Positions 16,443 through 45,090 of a DNA stretch of 64,000 nucleotides are shown one piece after another. Below the pieces are notes generated by a model. It ran no database searches and was not told the DNA's origin. It saw only the letters and a list, made by a program, of their open reading frames with translations. The position numbers and the translations under genes are program-made. Position 1 is the stretch's first letter, and every line of letters starts with the position of its first letter. The stretch spans positions 124,001 to 188,000 of the IMG/VR virus record IMGVR_UViG_3300035070_002626. One strand, 5' to 3'.

Positions 16443-16450
16443 TATTTATA
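16443..16450 (-). promoter_or_regulatory. T4-type late promoter for the csg operon
   Basis: Exact TATAAATA just upstream of csgF. Confidence 0.6.
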
Positions 16451-20444: not shown

Positions 20445-20475
20445 TATTTATACACGATACAACCAACAATGTCAA
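20445..20475 (-). promoter_or_regulatory. Composite early/late promoter of hsp20
   Basis: TTGACA-N17-TATAAA in which the -10 box is also TATAAATA. Confidence 0.7.
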
Positions 20476-36774: not shown

Positions 36775-36803
36775 AATGTAGCATACTATTAATTGCTTGT
36801 CAA
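36775..36803 (-). promoter_or_regulatory. Sigma70-type promoter (leaderless transcript)
   Basis: TTGACA-N17-TACATT, 6 nt before ATG. Confidence 0.6.
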
Positions 36804-37144
36804 GTTAAATCGTTGGCCGAATCAGCCATATCTGCAACTGTGTCTCTTGCTTGATCAACTGTCATAGTATCGTCAACTTCTATGTTAGCACCGCCGCTGA
36901 GTATAACTTCATCGTCAGTTACATTAACGATAACATTTTTCAACGGATCATGCCCTGCCAAGTTGCGAAGTTGTTTATCGGTTATGGCTACACCCATGTT
37001 GTGTGCCATGCTTAAAAAAGCATCAATGGGCACTGCTTTTTCACTGTCAGCGTCATCAGTTCGTCCCAGCAAGTATTCAGCAAGTGCCATAAGTTCCTGG
37101 GGCGATGGGTGGTCAACTGATTCTCTGAACTCGCGAAATCGCAT
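36800..37144 (-). CDS. Hypothetical protein, putative internal head protein
   Basis: N-terminus MRFREFRES resembles T4 capsid-targeting sequences. Confidence 0.65.
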   Translation of the reverse strand: MRFREFRESVDHPSPQELMALAEYLLGRTDDADSEKAVPIDAFLSMAHNMGVAITDKQLRNLAGHDPLKNVIVNVTDDEVILSGGANIEVDDTMTVDQARDTVADMADSANDLT

Positions 37145-37145
37145 A

Positions 37146-38198
37146 TTATCTACGAGCTCTTCCTAGACTGCCCATTTCTGGTTCTTCAACATCAACGTCT
37201 ATGTCTACATCAACATCGTCAACTTCAGCATCTACATCCATATCTGCATCAAAGCCAACTTCTTCTTCGGCACCGGGGACTACTGGTTCTTGACCAGTAA
37301 GTGTGCCTTGTGCACTTTCAACACCAAGTTTAGCAGCTTGTACTGCATCAACTAGTGCAGCTAGTGCTGCACTGGCTTCGTTGTTAAATGCTTGTGCTTC
37401 ATTTGTACCAACTGTGCTTGCAATACTAGTGCTCAACGCAGGCAAATCTTTAAATTGCATAGCAGTCACATCTTCTAGCATGCTTTGCATTCTGTCGACC
37501 ATATCCTGTGCAGCTAAAACAACTTGAGCTTGCTGTACTTCGTCTTCAGTTAAGTAACGACCATCCATTGTTACTGTGGTTCCTTCGTTGCGTAGCTTGT
37601 TTAGCACGGCGCCAGCAACACGCTGTCCTGCTGCTTTTGATCCATACTTCTTAGCAGCATTTTTAGCAATTTTAGCAAAATTCTTACCTGGTTTACCAAT
37701 GTCTTTGCCAGCGGCTGCCTTTTTAGCAGAGTAGTCATCTTTGGCTTCGGTTGTAGCAAGCATGCCCGCTAGCTGATCAGCTACTGCCTTGTCTGGACCA
37801 GCAACGGCTGTGCCTGCTAGTGCTTTTGTTAGCGATTGAGGATTTGTATTAAGTTTTTTAGCAAGTGCATTTTGTTCTGCTGGACTGATTGTTTGTTGAC
37901 TTTTGATTTTATCTAAGCTTTGCTTGACCATTGGATCTGCCATAGTGTTTTCGTCCATTGACAATCTGGCACTAAGTCCACGTTCCATGACCAGTAGTTT
38001 TAAGTACCCGGCATCTTTTTCACTAGTGTGCAACTTGCTGGTATTACGGTGCTCGCTCATTAAACTGCGAACTTTTTTCAGCATGCCTTTGGCTTTTTCT
38101 GGAGCCAATGTAGTGAAGTCAACTTTGTTGTGAAAATAACTTTCCATAACTTTTTGTGACTGTTTAGTTTGTGACGATTCCAGGTCAAATAGTTTCAT
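37146..38198 (-). CDS. Putative prohead core/internal head protein
   Basis: Several L/hydrophobic-x-E sites, basic K/A-rich insert, acidic tail ending LGRARR. Confidence 0.6.
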   Translation of the reverse strand: MKLFDLESSQTKQSQKVMESYFHNKVDFTTLAPEKAKGMLKKVRSLMSEHRNTSKLHTSEKDAGYLKLLVMERGLSARLSMDENTMADPMVKQSLDKIKSQQTISPAEQNALAKKLNTNPQSLTKALAGTAVAGPDKAVADQLAGMLATTEAKDDYSAKKAAAGKDIGKPGKNFAKIAKNAAKKYGSKAAGQRVAGAVLNKLRNEGTTVTMDGRYLTEDEVQQAQVVLAAQDMVDRMQSMLEDVTAMQFKDLPALSTSIASTVGTNEAQAFNNEASAALAALVDAVQAAKLGVESAQGTLTGQEPVVPGAEEEVGFDADMDVDAEVDDVDVDIDVDVEEPEMGSLGRARR

Positions 38199-39500: not shown

Positions 39501-39758
39501 TTATGCAGATGGGTTAGCGAATGTTGCTACTAGTGAGATACCAGTGACTGCTTCTGCGCCACCCGGGCCGCCTTGTACAGCAACGTGGTTGCCGTCTGCA
39601 ACACCTTCAACAGCGGCAATTGTGCCACCATATGTTGTTGTGATTGCTGTGCAAGCGGCTGCTACTGTGATATCTCCAGTTGCTACTGCATAGATGTAAG
39701 TTGTTGGACCAAGACCTTGGCCTTGCTTAACTGTTGCGTTTGTTGAAATTTCAGCCAT
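39501..39758 (-). CDS. Small A/G/T-rich protein, possibly a capsid decoration protein
   Basis: AGGAGA RBS, TAAATA upstream, own terminator. Confidence 0.65.
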   Translation of the reverse strand: MAEISTNATVKQGQGLGPTTYIYAVATGDITVAAACTAITTTYGGTIAAVEGVADGNHVAVQGGPGGAEAVTGISLVATFANPSA

Positions 39759-39815
39759 TTTATTTCTCCTAAATAATGGTTGGAACAATACTGTCCCTAC
39801 TTTTATTTAGCACGT

Positions 39816-40748
39816 TTACGAGATATCGAGTGTTCTCAGTCTTTCATAGCTTTCGTTCTGAAATCCACGTTCACGCATTTGTAGCATGAGTCGATCTACA
39901 ATAACTTTCCTGTCCTGCGGCTTTGTACGATCCCAATTTCCAATTTGTCTACGCATTTGTATCAGTGGAGCTGGTAGATAATCTTGCATTTCTCGTTGTA
40001 ACATCAACATCAAATAATTATAATCGCCAGCATTATATTTGTTTTTTGCTATTGCTCTTAGATTACGCTTTAACCGCAACTCTGGCACACTCACTTGCAC
40101 ATCTTGTACAATTTGATCGTCGAAGCGGTCTGGGTCAACCATAATAGTTAACACATTGTAAAGGTCTGGCTGGCTGGTACGAAACCCATCAAAGTTTTGT
40201 AATCTCATAATTTGTGCAGCTTGTTGTGCTGCATAAGTAGGGTCGCTTTGTGCAAAAATCTGCAATGCCAATAACTGTTCGAACATCAGTTCAGCAACCT
40301 TGCTCATTTTAAGACCAGTTAGTTGCTTCATTTGTCGCCACATGCGACTTTCACTGAGCTCGTGAAATATGCTTGTCTGCTCAACTGCAAATTCTTTGTT
40401 AGGAGTCTTGAAATCTTTTTTACGCATCACAGTTTTAGCAATCAAATCTAGTTCTTGGTTTGCACTATCCCACACAAGTGCAAACGGCACATTAATATCC
40501 GATGATAAATCTTTCAGCACCGCTTGTGCATCTGGTCCTAGTTGTGCAATCGGCTTGGCATACTTTTGAAATTCTTTTTTAAATAGTATTGCCAGCTCTT
40601 GTATTGTGATTTGCCGCACGTTGCGTTCATCATTTACACGATCTAGAAAGTGTCTTGTAAACTCAACATCGATTCCTACTTGGGCAAACACTTTATCAAG
40701 TGCTTTTTCTAGTGCATCAAGTTGTATTTGTGTTACTGGCTGATCCAT
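39816..40748 (-). CDS. Two-domain protein with an N-terminal RegB/RelE(BECR)-like RNase domain
   Basis: VEFTRHFLDRVND resembles T4 RegB LKYSQHLLDRAI; KTVMRK at the domain end; LSE linker. Confidence 0.5.
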   Translation of the reverse strand: MDQPVTQIQLDALEKALDKVFAQVGIDVEFTRHFLDRVNDERNVRQITIQELAILFKKEFQKYAKPIAQLGPDAQAVLKDLSSDINVPFALVWDSANQELDLIAKTVMRKKDFKTPNKEFAVEQTSIFHELSESRMWRQMKQLTGLKMSKVAELMFEQLLALQIFAQSDPTYAAQQAAQIMRLQNFDGFRTSQPDLYNVLTIMVDPDRFDDQIVQDVQVSVPELRLKRNLRAIAKNKYNAGDYNYLMLMLQREMQDYLPAPLIQMRRQIGNWDRTKPQDRKVIVDRLMLQMRERGFQNESYERLRTLDIS

Positions 40749-42628
40749 TAGTTTTGCCCTGGATTATTTTGTGCAAAGTTAGCTTGCGAAAATCTCATAC
40801 GATCCACAAACTTCATTCCTGCCCCTACATATCCTTCATGACCGGGTTCGCCTGCAATGTCGGCTTTTACATCTTGGTCTTGTGCATCCAACTGTCGTAC
40901 CAAGTCATTTTTAAGTTGACTGATATTTAAAAATCCACTGAACAATGCCGCAACTGCGCTTTTATTTTGATTCATCCAGTCAATGATACGAGCTGCCTTG
41001 GTCGGCTGTTTTTGTTCAATCCAGGGACCAAAGTCTTTGATCATGTTTTTATAATTGCCGCTGCGCACTTTACTGTTGATATATTGCTTTATTAATGCTG
41101 GTGTGTTTGTTATCTTTCTGCTGCGCAGCTCACCTGGGGCAAAAAATGCATCAATTTCGGGTGCATAGTTGTTGTAAATATTTTCCACTTGTGCAATTAA
41201 ATCTGCATTTAATTCAATTTTACTACCAGTGTCTTTCATAGTTGGGTCGAGTATGAGAACACCCGGTGCTTTGTTTAATACTGCACTGGTAATAGGAGTT
41301 GCAGGACCGCCAGGGCCGTCAATTGATGTGTGTACTGCAACACCTGCTTCACTATTACCAACTGCCTTTCCAATTGGTGTGTTTGCACCAACACGATATG
41401 TAACAGTGTTAGGAGTAAAAACATACATACCATCTTCCAGTGGAGGAGTATCGCTGTACAACAAATCACCTTGCACATATCCGCGGAAGTCTTTGGGCAC
41501 TGTGCGACTTAGCAACGGAAACAATTTAGCATACACTGCAATTAGATCTGTTCTATCACCTTTGCGCATACTCATAATACGTTCAATATCTTTTGGAGAC
41601 TTGGCTAGGCCGTTGTAGCCTTTTGCAAGGAACCCTGACTTATCAGTAAGCACAAAGTCTCCTGTGCTGTCTCTACCAAATATAACTGCTGGCTTACCGT
41701 CCCATTTAATAGTGTTTGTTTTAGCAGGTTCTGCGGCAGCACGTTTGAGACCTGCAAGTGCTTGTGTAAGACCTTTACTACCGTAATCAAAGATTAAGTC
41801 TTCAGGGTGTTCAATTCGCACACCTTCGGTTAGTTTGTAAGGTGTGTATGGATTTTCAGTGATGACTTCCATGCCCTGATATACAATTCTATCACGCAAC
41901 CGTGCAAGCCAAGCAGTTCCAGATTCGTTTACTTCTTCAAAAGTAAACCCTTCTCGTTCAGCGTAGCCGCGGAAATCATCTAGTTTAGCATCACGTTGCT
42001 TGTCTGATTTAAGTTGAGCCATAATAGATTCTACACTAGCTAGGTCATCTCTGTTTGCATTTTTATTTAATAACAGTGTGGCAATTTTATCTGGGTCATC
42101 AGTTATAAATGCATTGTCTTCCCTGCGGTACAATCCCGAATTTTGATTAAGTTTAAGCCCTGCCGCTTTTGCAATACTATTAATGAGTACATTTCGTGTT
42201 GCACCCTTGTATTCACTGTTGGGATCACTGCGCAGTATAAACTTGCTAAACGCTGGCTTTTGCACAAACATAAAGTCAGTTTGCACATATCCGCGGTCTT
42301 CTCGTCCTGTGATAGGTGTTTTAAAATGCACACTAATGCCGCTTTTCTTTGTCCACTCTATTGGATCAAAACCGTGACTGGTTGCCCATTGTGTTAACCT
42401 GTTACTGAGTTCTTCTTTGCTCATAACTGTGCTGTCAACTGCAAGGTCTAAATCACCAGACGTTGGTTTTTGTCCTGTGCTTCCCAGCATGTTGTCCATG
42501 AGGGGCAGGCCAGTTAGTTGTTCAAGCCAGGCCACAGTTGACTTAACATCAGTTTGGTTAATGCGCTGTGTAGCACTTGCACCATCAGAATCTTTAAAAA
42601 CGTTGCCGCCTTCTTTGAGAAGTTTCAT
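40748..42628 (-). CDS. Fusion of a Pol-beta-type nucleotidyltransferase and an RNA-ligase-like domain (DUF6267-like)
   Basis: LGSTG.K..SGDLDL and VQTD; then IEHPED, KWDG, QGDL, EGYV, MKFVDR ligase-type motifs. Confidence 0.7.
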   Translation of the reverse strand: MKLLKEGGNVFKDSDGASATQRINQTDVKSTVAWLEQLTGLPLMDNMLGSTGQKPTSGDLDLAVDSTVMSKEELSNRLTQWATSHGFDPIEWTKKSGISVHFKTPITGREDRGYVQTDFMFVQKPAFSKFILRSDPNSEYKGATRNVLINSIAKAAGLKLNQNSGLYRREDNAFITDDPDKIATLLLNKNANRDDLASVESIMAQLKSDKQRDAKLDDFRGYAEREGFTFEEVNESGTAWLARLRDRIVYQGMEVITENPYTPYKLTEGVRIEHPEDLIFDYGSKGLTQALAGLKRAAAEPAKTNTIKWDGKPAVIFGRDSTGDFVLTDKSGFLAKGYNGLAKSPKDIERIMSMRKGDRTDLIAVYAKLFPLLSRTVPKDFRGYVQGDLLYSDTPPLEDGMYVFTPNTVTYRVGANTPIGKAVGNSEAGVAVHTSIDGPGGPATPITSAVLNKAPGVLILDPTMKDTGSKIELNADLIAQVENIYNNYAPEIDAFFAPGELRSRKITNTPALIKQYINSKVRSGNYKNMIKDFGPWIEQKQPTKAARIIDWMNQNKSAVAALFSGFLNISQLKNDLVRQLDAQDQDVKADIAGEPGHEGYVGAGMKFVDRMRFSQANFAQNNPGQN

Positions 42629-42637
42629 GCTTTTACC

Positions 42638-43180
42638 TTATTTGTTTTTTTCAGCCGCAGCAACTTTTGCTGCCAGTGCCGGATATCTCGGATCGGTTGG
42701 TAGTATTCCACCAATTGCAGGAAGCTTGGATTGCTTGGTTGCTTTGGCTTTTTGTCCCGGTACCGGTGTCGGGGCAACTGGTGTTGACTTTGCAATTCCT
42801 GTAGCAATGCTGCTAGGGCGTTTTTTCTTTTGTCTAGCAATGCTTTTTGCAATAGCAGCTTTTTCAACTTTTTCTTGGCGTGCTTTTTCTAACTTTTCTG
42901 GGTCCATGCCTTGTTTTTTCATTAGCTGCGATTTACGTGCTGCCTGTTCTATTTCTTTTTGGTTAGCATCCCATGTTGCTTGAGGATCAGCTGCTGATTT
43001 CTTTACACTAGGCTTAGATGGATCATAGTCTTGTATTTTTTTGCCAAGATTACTAAGTTTATCTAAACCTGTAGCAACACCAGAAACAGCTTTCCCGGCT
43101 TTTTTAAAAAATTCAATTTCAGATACTTTTTCAAGTTCTGCTAATAGATTTTCTTGTATTAGTTGTGCTTTACTTTTCAT
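42638..43180 (-). CDS. Lys/Ala-rich hypothetical protein, putative internal head protein
   Basis: LIQE/LLAE/VSE sites; low-complexity basic body. Confidence 0.6.
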   Translation of the reverse strand: MKSKAQLIQENLLAELEKVSEIEFFKKAGKAVSGVATGLDKLSNLGKKIQDYDPSKPSVKKSAADPQATWDANQKEIEQAARKSQLMKKQGMDPEKLEKARQEKVEKAAIAKSIARQKKKRPSSIATGIAKSTPVAPTPVPGQKAKATKQSKLPAIGGILPTDPRYPALAAKVAAAEKNK

Positions 43181-43430
43181 TTGTACGCCTTACCGATCTA
43201 GAAAACTTGCCAGGATCTCGTGCTCGGATGGCATTTAACAATTTGCGTTGTAAATTTTCAGCTTGCTCAGCAGTGTATAATTCTTCAATTTGTTCCATCA
43301 GGCGCACTGCGCTAGCAATAACATTACTAGCACGACTCTCGACAACATATTCACGTTCTTCGAGTTGTTTATAACGCTCATTGTAAATGCCATCTAGCTC
43401 TTCAAAGATGCTGCGAGTCTTTTTTTGCAT
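43170..43430 (-). CDS. Hypothetical protein
   Basis: AAGGA RBS, TAAATA upstream; first gene of a late operon. Confidence 0.7.
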   Translation of the reverse strand: MQKKTRSIFEELDGIYNERYKQLEEREYVVESRASNVIASAVRLMEQIEELYTAEQAENLQRKLLNAIRARDPGKFSRSVRRTNEK

Positions 43431-43454
43431 GACTTTGTTTGTCCTTTTTAGTAT

Positions 43455-44045
43455 TTATGTATATTTAAAAAGTTGTTGGTTTTCTGTTTCCCAGACTGCT
43501 TCGCTAAACCTTTTTAGTGTCCACATATTTTTTTCATACAGGTAACTGTTTTTTTCTTTCCAGATTTCCCATTGAGCATTATTTGTATCAAATAATTCGT
43601 GATCGCCTTCGATTAAATCAATTAATTCTATACTTTTGCACCCTGAGCGGGCTTTAATTATTTTTGGTATAGCATATGTTTTTGCTAATTCTCTTATTTT
43701 ATCTATCGATTCTGGTGTAGTATCTTCCGTCCAATTTGGATGTAGAAACTTATAACATCTTAAAAATATTATATACCGACTGTAGATGTTCTCTGTAGTA
43801 ATGATTAATTTTTCGTCAAAAAGATCAAGTGGCACGTCTTCGATGTGTGTATGATACCAAACGCCTGGTTTGGTTGTACGGTAGCCTTCGTGAAAAAGTT
43901 CAATGGTTTTAAGGTCTTGGTGCTCATAACTATCTACACTGCCGTCCAGTCTGGGGTTCCATTTGATTTGCTGATTGTTTAAAATAGTAGTAACAATTCC
44001 GCCGCATGCAAAATCAGTGGCTATTAAAATATTTGGTAATTTCAT
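43455..44045 (-). CDS. Hypothetical protein
   Basis: 196-aa ORF; N-terminal ACGG motif similar to 53500-54162. Confidence 0.65.
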   Translation of the reverse strand: MKLPNILIATDFACGGIVTTILNNQQIKWNPRLDGSVDSYEHQDLKTIELFHEGYRTTKPGVWYHTHIEDVPLDLFDEKLIITTENIYSRYIIFLRCYKFLHPNWTEDTTPESIDKIRELAKTYAIPKIIKARSGCKSIELIDLIEGDHELFDTNNAQWEIWKEKNSYLYEKNMWTLKRFSEAVWETENQQLFKYT

Positions 44046-45090
44046 GGAAGGTTGTATCCCATTGCAGATTTCGCCATTTGTCTAATGTGTTTGCCCAATT
44101 AATTGCTGATTCGTGCTCAGTATACGGATACTGACTTAACATGATGGATATTTCATGCTCACTTCCGTACCTTTCTTTTATCTTTTTTCGCAGTGCAGTT
44201 GGTGTTTTTTCAATTCCTATAGTACCGTGGCACGGGTGTATATTAAAATCACTAGGATCACCAAATCTATTTGTCGGCATTGTATCCCTGTGCCACTCTT
44301 TTATTTTATCATAGTAAAAGACGTTGAAAGGATTTAACGTATGTTCTATGCCAAACATAACATTTCCCGGACATTCCGCTACGGCTTTACTAACCAGCTT
44401 TTCAACTGTTGAAAATTTTGCTGGCCAACGCAAATATTCAAATTGTTTGCCTACTCCGTCGATACTACCAATCCATTTAACTAATTTAAAACGTTGCCAC
44501 TGTGCTAGTGTTTTATCCGAAGGATACAATGTGTAATTGCTGGTATACTGTATTGTGATGTCTTGTGGGTTGTTAACAAGTTCTAGTATTCGTAAATGAG
44601 TATTATTCATTAATGGTTCGCCGCCACCAAACTTGATATACCTAAGGTTTGTAGTATCCAGTGTTTCGAACCAACTTACTAGTTTGTCGTCGGTGTTTGT
44701 GCCTTTTCGATCCAACACTTTAATGTTCTCTACGCCATTTCGAACGTTTTCGTCTTGCCAGAAACTGCTACTATTGCTATCACAACTAGCACAAGCAAGA
44801 TTGCATTGCTTGGTAACTGCGATAGTGAGCATCTGCAACCCATCATTGTCTGTCATTAAATCAAAACCAGCTTGCCTGTAGCTGATTTGTTTTTGTTGTT
44901 CTTGATGTATGCAAAGACTGCAAGTTTTTGTTAAATCACCCGAGTTCCACTTTTCTCTCAACTGAGGCAAGGTTGAAAGATCGTGTACACTCTCATTGTG
45001 CGAGAAATAACAACACGGACTGACAGTAAAATCTCCGCCAAGGTTGTTGATTGCAAGTGCACTGCTCAGATGTCTACAAAATTGGGTCAT
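44014..45090 (-). CDS. Radical SAM protein with an N-terminal SPASM/twitch-like domain
   Basis: CNLACASC, GGEP, SIDG; N-terminal C..PCC..C..C. Confidence 0.9.
   Translation of the reverse strand: MTQFCRHLSSALAINNLGGDFTVSPCCYFSHNESVHDLSTLPQLREKWNSGDLTKTCSLCIHQEQQKQISYRQAGFDLMTDNDGLQMLTIAVTKQCNLACASCDSNSSSFWQDENVRNGVENIKVLDRKGTNTDDKLVSWFETLDTTNLRYIKFGGGEPLMNNTHLRILELVNNPQDITIQYTSNYTLYPSDKTLAQWQRFKLVKWIGSIDGVGKQFEYLRWPAKFSTVEKLVSKAVAECPGNVMFGIEHTLNPFNVFYYDKIKEWHRDTMPTNRFGDPSDFNIHPCHGTIGIEKTPTALRKKIKERYGSEHEISIMLSQYPYTEHESAINWANTLDKWRNLQWDTTFHEITKYFNSH

What the first reader, a model, noticed from the sequence alone, without database searches (positions are those of the whole stretch)
39816..42628. 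NTase-RNA-ligase-like fusion coupled to a RegB-like RNase: candidate injected RNA cut-and-repair module
Seen: the 626-aa protein has a Pol-beta NTase signature (GSTG..SGDLD..D) and covalent nucleotidyltransferase motifs I/III/IV/V (KWDG, QGDL, EGYV, MK), separated by LTE-G, and it begins MKLLKE-G. The coupled downstream gene has FTRHFLDR (T4 RegB has YSQHLLDR) and an LSE linker. Established: T4 gp21 cleaves head proteins after (L/I)-x-E. Inference: polyproteins are packaged in the head, cut into separate enzymes and injected to repair tRNA/rRNA broken by host anticodon nucleases, or to remodel host RNA or make a nucleotide signal.
Basis: partly seen in the sequence, partly recalled or inferred. 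Interest (0 to 1): 0.74.

Follow-up and report, generated by a model that had tools for sequence, protein, structure and literature searches.

The report
Capsid-targeted polymerase–ligase polyprotein of a phage
A 300-kb T4-like marine phage encodes a two-enzyme protein (a minimal polymerase-beta-type enzyme joined to a previously unnamed ligase-type enzyme), followed by a RegB-like RNA-cutting protein. Each module is bounded by conserved T4 head-protease cut sites, so the enzymes are probably loaded into the capsid, cut apart and delivered with the DNA to mend broken nucleic acid.

Summary

**Protein A** (626 aa; model pLDDT 92.8) has three parts:
- a disordered linker;
- DUF6267, which has the ATP-dependent ligase nucleotidyltransferase fold. 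KxDG, EG and K are near-invariant, and there is no OB domain.

**Cut sites.** Across roughly 100 representatives at 30-69% identity, [LIV]xE lies directly before the polymerase module in 42 of 43 and within 12 residues of the ligase module in 66 of 76. The phage encodes a gp21-type protease, and a T4 late-promoter motif heads the operon. Packaging, cleavage and injection remain inferences.

**Open or negative points.**
- The substrate is unresolved. I lean towards DNA gap-fill and nick-seal: six of seven DUF6267 phages lack a canonical DNA ligase. RNA repair is the main rival.
- B has no targeting peptide.
- B's RNase module is not constantly linked to A.

The parts
43452..43459 (-). CATAAATA, a T4-type late-promoter-like motif 28 nt upstream of the first gene of the operon
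   Evidence: ATAAATA occurs 55 times in the 300-kb genome. 34 of these lie within 60 nt upstream of an ORF on the coding strand, against about 2 expected, mostly before large structural-type genes. Sequence read.
43170..43430 (-). p86, an 86-aa protein that starts MQKKTRSIFE|E (CTS-like). It is a conserved upstream partner of A.
   Evidence: phrog_11854 'virion structural protein', E 7.5e-14. Homologues lie directly upstream of the A homologues in L008 and L009.
42638..43180 (-). p180, a 180-aa Lys/Ala-rich protein that starts MKSKAQLIQE|N (CTS-like). No family match.
42611..42628 (-). Protein A residues 1-6, MKLLKE: predicted propeptide ending in a gp21-type L-x-E site
   Evidence: [LIV]xE lies directly before GGN[VI]FK in 42 of 43 representatives. 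Two homologues start MGG, exactly at the predicted mature end. For comparison, T4 Alt loses a 7-residue propeptide (PMC9026906).
41879..42610 (-). Protein A residues 7-250: minimal family-X polymerase-like module (palm plus thumb). Carboxylate triad D59, D61, D118; GS(x8)GDLDL; thumb motif GLKLN..GL.
41825..41878 (-). Protein A residues 251-268: disordered linker carrying two predicted protease sites, ITE258 and LTE268
   Evidence: pLDDT below 50 over residues 250-268. One or two [LIV]xE in this otherwise variable linker in 26 of 27 two-domain homologues.
40751..41824 (-). Protein A residues 269-626: DUF6267, a ligase-type nucleotidyltransferase module. Motif I K308-W-D-G, III G-D388-L-L-Y, IV E598-G-Y-V, V K606. 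Helical insert at about 475-581. No OB domain.
40380..40748 (-). Protein B residues 1-123: RegB/RelE-like module (helix, strand, H33-F-L-D-R37 helix, helix, four strands). It has no N-terminal targeting peptide.
40350..40379 (-). Protein B residues 124-133: low-confidence linker ending in LSE133
   Evidence: pLDDT below 50 over residues 125-148. [LV]xE directly before SR is kept in homologues that carry different inserted modules.
39819..40349 (-). Protein B residues 134-310: helical module of unknown function
   Evidence: Low-confidence model. 38% identical to the C-terminal part of the gene that follows the A homologue in L009. No family match.

Best explanation
Protein A is a late-expressed, capsid-targeted polyprotein.

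**Proposed mechanism.** During head maturation the phage's gp21-type prohead protease cuts after LKE6 and in the linker (ITE258 and/or LTE268). This releases two enzymes: a minimal family-X polymerase-like nucleotidyltransferase and an OB-less, ATP-dependent ligase-type enzyme (DUF6267). They stay in the head and enter the cell with the genome. There the polymerase module fills or extends a 3'-OH end, and the ligase module, through a Lys308-AMP intermediate, seals the remaining nick.

**Substrate.** I commit to duplex strand-break repair, most likely on the phage's own DNA. This is a gap-fill and nick-seal kit, possibly using ribonucleotide patches, which would fit a ligase that looks like nick-sealing RNA ligases.

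**Protein B.** B is co-transcribed. It is a RegB/RelE-type endoribonuclease module joined by a cleavable-looking linker to a helical module. It is a separate cargo or effector, not an obligatory partner of A.

**Shown:** the folds, motif conservation, conservation of the cut sites, the protease gene, the late-promoter motif and the absence of canonical ligases.

**Inferred:** packaging, cleavage, injection, catalytic activities and the substrate.
For: **Folds and motifs**
-.

**Boundary sites**
-. These include stand-alone modules that start with T4-CTS-like peptides (MRAQEF[LTE], MR[LFE]F, as against T4 MKTYQEFIAE), and two homologues that start MGG.
- [LIV]xE also separates DUF6267 from a fused HIGH-type nucleotidyltransferase.

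**Phage context**
- gp21-type protease and gp23 in the genome.
- Late-promoter motif, and no minus-strand terminator in the operon.
- Neighbours with PHROG 'virion structural protein' hits.

**Partial check of the targeting-peptide logic in cyanophages**
- The cytidylyltransferase beside DUF6267 in P-RSM6 starts MITFHVF[ITE].
- Cytidylyltransferases so annotated were found in virions of two other cyanophages by mass spectrometry: S-SM1 (PMC3037559) and S-CREM2 (PMC10665884). Their equivalence to the P-RSM6 gene is assumed from synteny and annotation, and their N-termini were not read here.
- The cyanophage DUF6267 starts at the mature end, with no propeptide.
- I did not identify DUF6267 among the proteins listed for the S-CREM2 virion. 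I did not map it to an ORF number.

**DNA leaning**
- PolX-specific thumb.
- The genome has no PF01068, PF01653 or PF09414.
- Five of six complete DUF6267-bearing Kyanoviridae lack both canonical DNA ligase families, while T4 and phiM12 have gp30-type ligase and no DUF6267.
- gp30 is listed as a non-cyanophage core gene (PMC5349666).
- DUF6267 sits in the UvsX-gp41-primase neighbourhood.
- Fusion partners include NT5C-type HAD phosphatases.
Against: - There is no proteomic or biochemical evidence for this phage.
- Genome-wide enrichment of N-terminal [LI]xE is weak: 35 against 26 expected, P about 0.06.
- The conserved [LIV]xE-GGN could be part of the fold rather than a cut site.
- The nearest structures to the ligase module are RNA ligases, not DNA ligases. 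It lacks the OB domain that, to my knowledge, all characterised DNA ligases have.
- No sequence-profile link to Rnl1, Rnl2, gp30 or any PDB chain.
- S-CRM01 carries both DUF6267 and a small PF01068 ligase, so the two are not strictly exclusive.
- Phages that lack a ligase are usually assumed to use the host's LigA.
- B lacks a targeting peptide.
- phiM12 gp159, which ends in the same RNase module, is not annotated as a virion protein.
Confidence: 0.4

Rival explanations
1. The released enzymes repair RNA: the Pol-beta-type module restores nucleotides lost from cleaved tRNA or rRNA ends, and the ligase reseals them. This would counter host anticodon nucleases immediately on entry, in the way RlaP works with an RNA ligase.
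For: - The best structural matches of the ligase module are RNA ligases (NgrRnl, REL1, Trl1, T4 Rnl2), and there is no OB domain.
- Pol-beta NTases that work beside RNA ligases are an established phage theme (RlaP: PMC7824862; bioRxiv 10.64898/2025.12.29.696909).
- HAD phosphatase fusions recall the phosphatase of T4 Pnkp.
- The RegB-like RNase module is fused to the PolX-like module in P0389 and adjacent here.
Against: - No Pfam RlaP hit.
- No polynucleotide kinase module among the fusions scanned.
- Kyanoviridae keep DUF6267 among replication genes and mostly lack a DNA ligase.
Confidence: 0.3
2. The proteins are not packaged at all. The PolX-ligase protein acts inside the infected cell in replication or recombination (Okazaki-fragment or gap sealing). 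The conserved [LIV]xE elements would then be structural, or serve some other processing.
For: - Position next to DnaB helicase and primase.
- Cyanophage DUF6267 has no propeptide, and I did not identify it among the proteins listed for the S-CREM2 virion.
- The genome lacks any other ligase.
Against: - The [LIV]xE sites sit in a disordered, otherwise variable linker. They precede modules whatever lies upstream, between 0 and 436 residues.
- Stand-alone modules carry CTS-like leaders.
- A late-promoter motif heads the operon.
- The neighbours match virion proteins.
Confidence: 0.15
3. The modules are unrelated cargo strung together, as in polyvalent effector proteins, with no shared pathway. 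For example, the NTase could modify host RNA or make a signal while the ligase-fold enzyme AMPylates a protein.
For: - Modules recombine freely with amidoligase, DUF5661, HAD and HIGH-NTase domains, in varying order.
- Polyvalent virion proteins are known (PMC5512222).
Against: - The PolX-like, DUF6267 and HIGH-NTase modules recur together in different orders, for example P0258 and P0279. That argues for functional linkage.
- All ligase and polymerase catalytic residues are conserved.
Confidence: 0.1

Closest known systems
African swine fever virus Pol X, which works with the viral ligase
   Different: Here the two enzymes are one polyprotein with protease-site boundaries, in a T4-like phage. 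The ligase has no OB domain and no detectable sequence similarity to DNA ligases.
RlaP with Rnl RNA-repair pairs of phages and bacteria
   Same: A Pol-beta-superfamily nucleotidyltransferase physically linked to an ATP-dependent ligase, proposed to restore lost nucleotides before sealing (PMC7824862; bioRxiv 10.64898/2025.12.29.696909).
   Different: No PF10127 match. The N-module is PolX-like and has a thumb. The ligase is DUF6267, not Rnl1 or Rnl2. Predicted capsid targeting is not described for RlaP.
T4 internal proteins and Alt (capsid targeting sequence, gp21 processing)
   Same: Short N-terminal leaders ending in (L/I)xE. A gp21-family protease is present. The cargo is enzymes thought to be injected with the DNA (PMC9026906).
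   Different: The cargo here is a multi-enzyme polyprotein with internal cut sites between catalytic modules. These enzyme types are not known among T4 head proteins.
T4 RegB and the RelE/YoeB toxins
   Same: Same fold order, including RegB's extra first helix. His and Arg occur in the same H-x-x-D-R helix as RegB His48 (PMC3014915).
   Different: No counterpart of RegB's second catalytic His68. No Pfam or profile match. Late operon and fused helical domain, whereas RegB is an early stand-alone protein.
Polyvalent virion proteins (Iyer et al. 2017)
   Same: Modular multi-enzyme proteins that phages are predicted to package. They include RelE-fold RNases (PMC5512222).
   Different: In the passages I searched, that survey did not find its 2H domains associated with RNA ligases, and I found no mention of ligase or PolX modules in polyvalent proteins. 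Release here would be by the T4-type head protease at [LIV]xE, rather than by embedded metallopeptidase domains.

Membership tests
Family X DNA polymerases | Palm plus thumb fold | tested here: met
Family X DNA polymerases | hGS(x8-13)GDhDh motif plus a third Asp (carboxylate triad) | tested here: met
   G49, S50, D59, D61 and D118 are present and 89-98% conserved.
Family X DNA polymerases | Sequence-profile match to a curated model | tested here: not met
   Only DNA_pol_B_thumb at E 0.14, below cut-off. No PDB profile hit.
Family X DNA polymerases | Fingers and 8-kDa lyase domains | tested here: not met
   The module is about 245 residues, and the alignments cover palm and thumb only. ASFV PolX has the same minimal layout.
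Family X DNA polymerases | Templated dNTP or rNTP addition | not testable with these tools
   Needs an enzyme assay.
ATP-dependent ligases (covalent nucleotidyltransferases) | Nucleotidyltransferase fold | tested here: met
ATP-dependent ligases (covalent nucleotidyltransferases) | Motif I KxDG with the adenylylated lysine | tested here: met
   K308 83/87, D310 83/84, G311 82/85. Invariant in the stand-alone set.
ATP-dependent ligases (covalent nucleotidyltransferases) | Motifs III, IV and V in order on beta strands | tested here: met
   G-D388-L-L-Y on strand 383-391; E598-G-Y-V on 599-602; K606 on 605-607. E598 and G599 are 78/78, K606 is 77/78. Residue-level superposition was not available.
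ATP-dependent ligases (covalent nucleotidyltransferases) | C-terminal OB domain (DNA ligases and capping enzymes) | tested here: not met
   The chain ends 20 residues after motif V. A helical insert lies at 475-581 instead.
ATP-dependent ligases (covalent nucleotidyltransferases) | Profile similarity to Rnl1, Rnl2 or gp30 | tested here: not met
   hhalign probability below 1% for all three. No Pfam ligase family matched.
RlaP (PF10127) | Match to the family model | tested here: not met
   No hit at E up to 1 on residues 1-268.
T4 RegB endoribonuclease | Fold: extra helix, two helices, four-stranded sheet | tested here: met
T4 RegB endoribonuclease | Catalytic His48 and His68 | tested here: inconclusive
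   H33 is invariant in the matching H-x-x-D-R motif, but there is no second invariant His.
T4 RegB endoribonuclease | Pfam or profile match | tested here: not met
   No Pfam hit. BLASTP E 0.61. hhalign probability 0.7%.
T4-type capsid-targeted, gp21-processed head proteins | gp21-family protease in the same genome | tested here: met
   PF03420, 91 bits, at G000 245293-245730.
T4-type capsid-targeted, gp21-processed head proteins | Short N-terminal leader ending in (L/I)xE | tested here: met
   Protein A has MKLLKE|G, conserved in 42 of 43 representatives. Protein B has none.
T4-type capsid-targeted, gp21-processed head proteins | Presence of processed forms in virions | not testable with these tools
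   Indirect evidence only. Cytidylyltransferases so annotated were detected in S-SM1 and S-CREM2 virions (PMC3037559, PMC10665884). The CTS-like start was read only in the P-RSM6 homologue.

The most novel reading that the evidence does not exclude
DUF6267 is the 'missing' DNA ligase of marine T4-like phages (Kyanoviridae and their jumbo relatives). It would be an OB-less ligase that replaced gp30. In some lineages it is fused to a minimal PolX and shipped ready-made inside the capsid, so that the incoming genome can be gap-filled and sealed before any phage gene is expressed.
Probability: 0.3. Interest if true: 0.8.

Novelty: new variant of a known kind. Interest (0 to 1): 0.62.

Why it matters
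- It would give a function to DUF6267. This family is present in nearly 300 sequenced phages, mostly cyanophages, and in over a thousand metagenomic cluster representatives.
- It would offer a candidate for the ligase that marine T4-like phages appear to lack.
- It points to a large, apparently undescribed set of enzyme modules (PolX-like, ligase, HIGH-type nucleotidyltransferase, HAD phosphatase, RegB-like RNase). These appear to be swapped between T4-like phages as cassettes bounded by head-protease sites.
- If confirmed, capsid delivery of a polymerase and a ligase would be a new kind of phage cargo. I know of no bacterial-virus precedent for it; ASFV, which from my own recollection carries repair enzymes in its virions, would be the nearest parallel.

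Tried and rejected
- Megablast of the locus against 50,697 phage records found no match.
- phmmer and profile searches of A, and of alignments A1 and A3, against PDB sequences found nothing meaningful.
- BLASTP and hhalign of B against T4 RegB were not significant.
- hhalign of the DUF6267 profile against T4 Rnl1, Rnl2 and gp30 was not significant. Only the EGYV motif lined up, with Rnl1.
- NCBIfam gave nothing for A or B. The ESM Atlas feature search for B's N-domain returned only unnamed viral clusters.
- A full-text search for 'DUF6267' found no paper.
- The supplementary files of Sullivan 2010 held no searchable entry for T4-GC190 or T4-GC15. I therefore could not tell whether DUF6267 is the second virion-detected core protein.
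- I planned a 2x2 presence/absence test on IMG/VR contigs and dropped it, because almost all 80 loci lie on fragments under 60 kb. I used six complete isolate genomes instead.
- Genome-wide enrichment of N-terminal [LI]xE is only marginal, so it is not used as evidence.
- No paralogues of any of the four modules exist in the genome.
- B's C-terminal domain could not be assigned: the model is low-confidence and it matches only generic helical bundles.
- No complex prediction was run, because no binding claim is made.
Full report
**Setting**

The window is bases 124,001-188,000 of a 299,910-bp IMG/VR virus record, estimated 86% complete. The genome encodes a T4 gp23-type major capsid protein (PF07068, E 2.8e-100) and a gp21-type prohead protease (PF03420, 91 bits). 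It is therefore a T4-like jumbo phage. Close homologues of both proteins are abundant in marine metagenomes, on contigs of up to 539 kb.

**The observation**

- ORF A is 40748-42628(-), 626 aa. ORF B is 39816-40748(-), 310 aa. They overlap as TAATG.
- T4 RegB does contain YSQHLLDR, which includes its catalytic His48 (PMC3014915).
- The number of (L/I)xE triplets in A and B is at or below chance. The count itself is no evidence.

**Protein A**

Pfam sees only DUF6267 on residues 272-620 (E 2.2e-48), and PHROGs sees only an unnamed family. An AlphaFold2 model built on 103 diverse homologues has mean pLDDT 92.8. It shows two domains joined by a disordered stretch, residues 250-268.

*N-terminal domain.*
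- G49, S50, D59, D61 and D118 are 89-98% conserved.
- It is a minimal PolX-like enzyme, not a generic NTase. It is not a Pfam RlaP.

*C-terminal domain.*
- It matches ten structures among the top fifty, and all ten are ATP-dependent ligases: NgrRnl 7.0, REL1 5.9, Trl1 5.7, T4 Rnl2 5.6, Rnl3 5.4, LigIV 5.2, LigIII 5.0.
- K308, D310 and G311 (motif I), D388 (III), E598 and G599 (IV) and K606 (V) are near-invariant, and they lie on strands in the canonical order.
- There is no OB domain. A helical insert lies between motifs IIIa and IV.
- Profile comparisons with T4 Rnl1, Rnl2 and gp30, and with all PDB sequences, find nothing.
- DUF6267 is therefore a ligase-fold family that sequence methods have not connected to known ligases. 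No paper in the library mentions it.

**Protein B**

- Residues 1-123 are modelled with pLDDT about 94. The rest is poorly modelled.
- The topology reproduces that described for RegB: an extra first helix, two helices and four strands (PMC3014915).
- H33 and R37 are invariant in a helix that corresponds in order to RegB's His48-containing helix. B has no second invariant histidine to match RegB His68.
- Pfam, BLASTP and hhalign give no support.
- I read this as 'works like a RegB/RelE-type RNase'. Membership of the RegB family is not established.

**Cut sites**

This is the strongest new result.
- In representatives sharing only 30-69% identity, the PolX-like module is directly preceded by [LIV]xE in 42 of 43 cases. 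This holds whatever lies upstream, from nothing to 436 residues. Two homologues begin MGG, exactly at the predicted mature end.
- DUF6267 is preceded by [LIV]xE within 12 residues in 66 of 76 cases. Two-domain proteins often carry two such sites in an otherwise variable, disordered linker.
- Stand-alone modules begin with leaders such as MRAQEF[LTE] or MR[LFE]F, which resemble the T4 capsid targeting sequence MKTYQEFIAE.
- The same motif separates DUF6267 from a fused HIGH-type nucleotidyltransferase. It also precedes B's C-terminal module.
- T4 gp21 removes leaders of 7-65 residues after Glu, and the first 10 residues of IPIII suffice for head targeting (PMC9026906).

*Partial check from published virion proteomes.*
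- The P-RSM6 cytidylyltransferase encoded next to DUF6267 starts MITFHVF[ITE].
- Cytidylyltransferases so annotated were detected in virions of two other cyanophages, S-SM1 and S-CREM2 (PMC3037559, PMC10665884). I did not read their N-termini, and their equivalence rests on synteny and annotation.
- The cyanophage DUF6267 starts at the mature end.
- I did not identify DUF6267 among the proteins listed for the S-CREM2 virion. I did not map it to an ORF number.

**Expression context**

- ATAAATA, the core of the T4 late promoter, occurs 55 times in the genome. 34 of these lie within 60 nt upstream of ORFs, against about 2 expected.
- One occurrence (CATAAATA, 43452-43459) lies 28 nt before p86. 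p86 heads the tightly packed minus-strand run p86-p180-A-B.
- No minus-strand terminator-like site interrupts that run.
- p86 and a nearby 350-aa protein match PHROG 'virion structural protein' families, and several neighbours have CTS-like starts.

- B has no leader peptide.
- In L008 no B homologue follows the A homologue. In L009 the following gene shares only B's C-terminal module.
- The RegB-like module is mobile. It is stand-alone with an M[KR][LI]xE leader, fused to other domains, or, in P0389, fused upstream of the PolX-like module.
- In phiM12 it ends a 602-aa protein that is not annotated as a virion protein.

**RNA or DNA?**

*For RNA.* The ligase resembles RNA ligases most and lacks an OB domain. 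The RlaP-Rnl precedent exists (PMC7824862; bioRxiv 10.64898/2025.12.29.696909). An RNase module is associated.

*For DNA.*
- The N-module is specifically PolX-like and has a thumb.
- DUF6267 sits in the UvsX-gp41-primase region in Kyanoviridae and here.
- This genome has no PF01068, PF01653 or PF09414.
- Five of six complete DUF6267-bearing isolates lack both canonical DNA ligase families, whereas T4 and phiM12 have a gp30-type ligase and no DUF6267.
- None of the genera that dominate the 2,645 gp30 hits appears among the named DUF6267-bearing genera, apart from one Vibrio record.
- gp30 is listed among 'non-cyanophage core' genes (PMC5349666).
- Recurrent fusion partners are NT5C-type HAD phosphatases and a HIGH-type nucleotidyltransferase.

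S-CRM01 has both DUF6267 and a small PF01068 ligase, so exclusivity is not strict.

A reading that reconciles both lines is a fill-in with ribonucleotides, sealed by a ligase that prefers a 3'-ribo nick. This is proposed for LigD and Rnl5-type enzymes (my own knowledge, not tested here).

**Verdict**

- The sequence observation is confirmed.
- The fold assignments are supported.
- The polyprotein and head-protease idea is well supported by comparative evidence but unproven.
- The specific RNA-repair function, and the functional coupling to the RNase, are open.
- The system is a new variant of known themes: T4 capsid-targeted cargo, phage nucleic-acid repair enzymes and polyvalent virion proteins.
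- It comes with a testable side hypothesis about the missing ligase of marine T4-like phages.

Noticed in passing
whole genome G000; in the window e.g. 43452-43459(-), 16443-16450(-), 20445-20452(-): NATAAATA behaves as this phage's late promoter. 34 of 55 ATAAATA sites lie within 60 nt upstream of ORFs, mostly 24-35 nt before large structural-type genes.
   Followed up: partly
window 36800-37144(-), 37146-38198(-), 42638-43180(-), 43170-43430(-); G000 120479-122017(+), 207145-207522(-), 210182-210790(-), 219505-219882(-): About ten ORFs start with T4 capsid-targeting-like leaders, for example MRAEEFITE, MRAIEFLQE, MKSFASYLTE and MREYLDIITE|G. This suggests a sizeable set of internal head proteins.
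   Followed up: partly
window 43170-43430(-): p86 gives a very weak hit to the YefM antitoxin of YoeB-YefM, far below cut-off (NCBIfam E 0.044). It is probably chance, because p86 also precedes A homologues that have no RegB-like neighbour. It is still curious beside a RelE/YoeB-fold RNase.
   Followed up: no
G000 68817-70244(-), outside the window: A 475-aa HIGH-type nucleotidyltransferase starts MLKKLVVIPGGFHPFHAGH. Its HIGH motif resembles that of the module fused to DUF6267 elsewhere (FIPGGFKPPHKGH). tblastn with the P-RSM6 virion-type 'cytidylyltransferase' found no match in this genome at E up to 0.01. Here it is stand-alone and has no leader peptide.
   Followed up: partly
whole record G000: No canonical ATP- or NAD-dependent DNA ligase and no Rnl2-type RNA ligase was found in 300 kb, at 86% estimated completeness.
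   Followed up: yes
L009 21-299 and 289-2136: In a 49%-identical relative, the A homologue starts MGG with no leader, and its start overlaps the end of the p86 homologue by 11 nt. I did not examine whether the two are joined by frameshifting or simply coupled.
   Followed up: no
window 44014-45090(-): A radical-SAM protein sits between the DnaB-like helicase and the p86-A operon. The same position is conserved in L008.
   Followed up: no
window 39501-39788(-): A Gly/Ala/Thr-rich ORF of about 85-95 aa lies directly downstream of B and has no family match. A 127-aa ORF occupies the same position in L009; its relatedness was not tested.
   Followed up: no
NC_015569.1 (S-CRM01) 142801-143331: This freshwater cyanophage carries both DUF6267 and a small (301-aa ORF) PF01068 ligase. 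It is the one exception to the complementary pattern among the six complete DUF6267-bearing genomes tested.
   Followed up: no
G000 273839-287359(+), outside the window: A single ORF of 4,506 aa.
   Followed up: no
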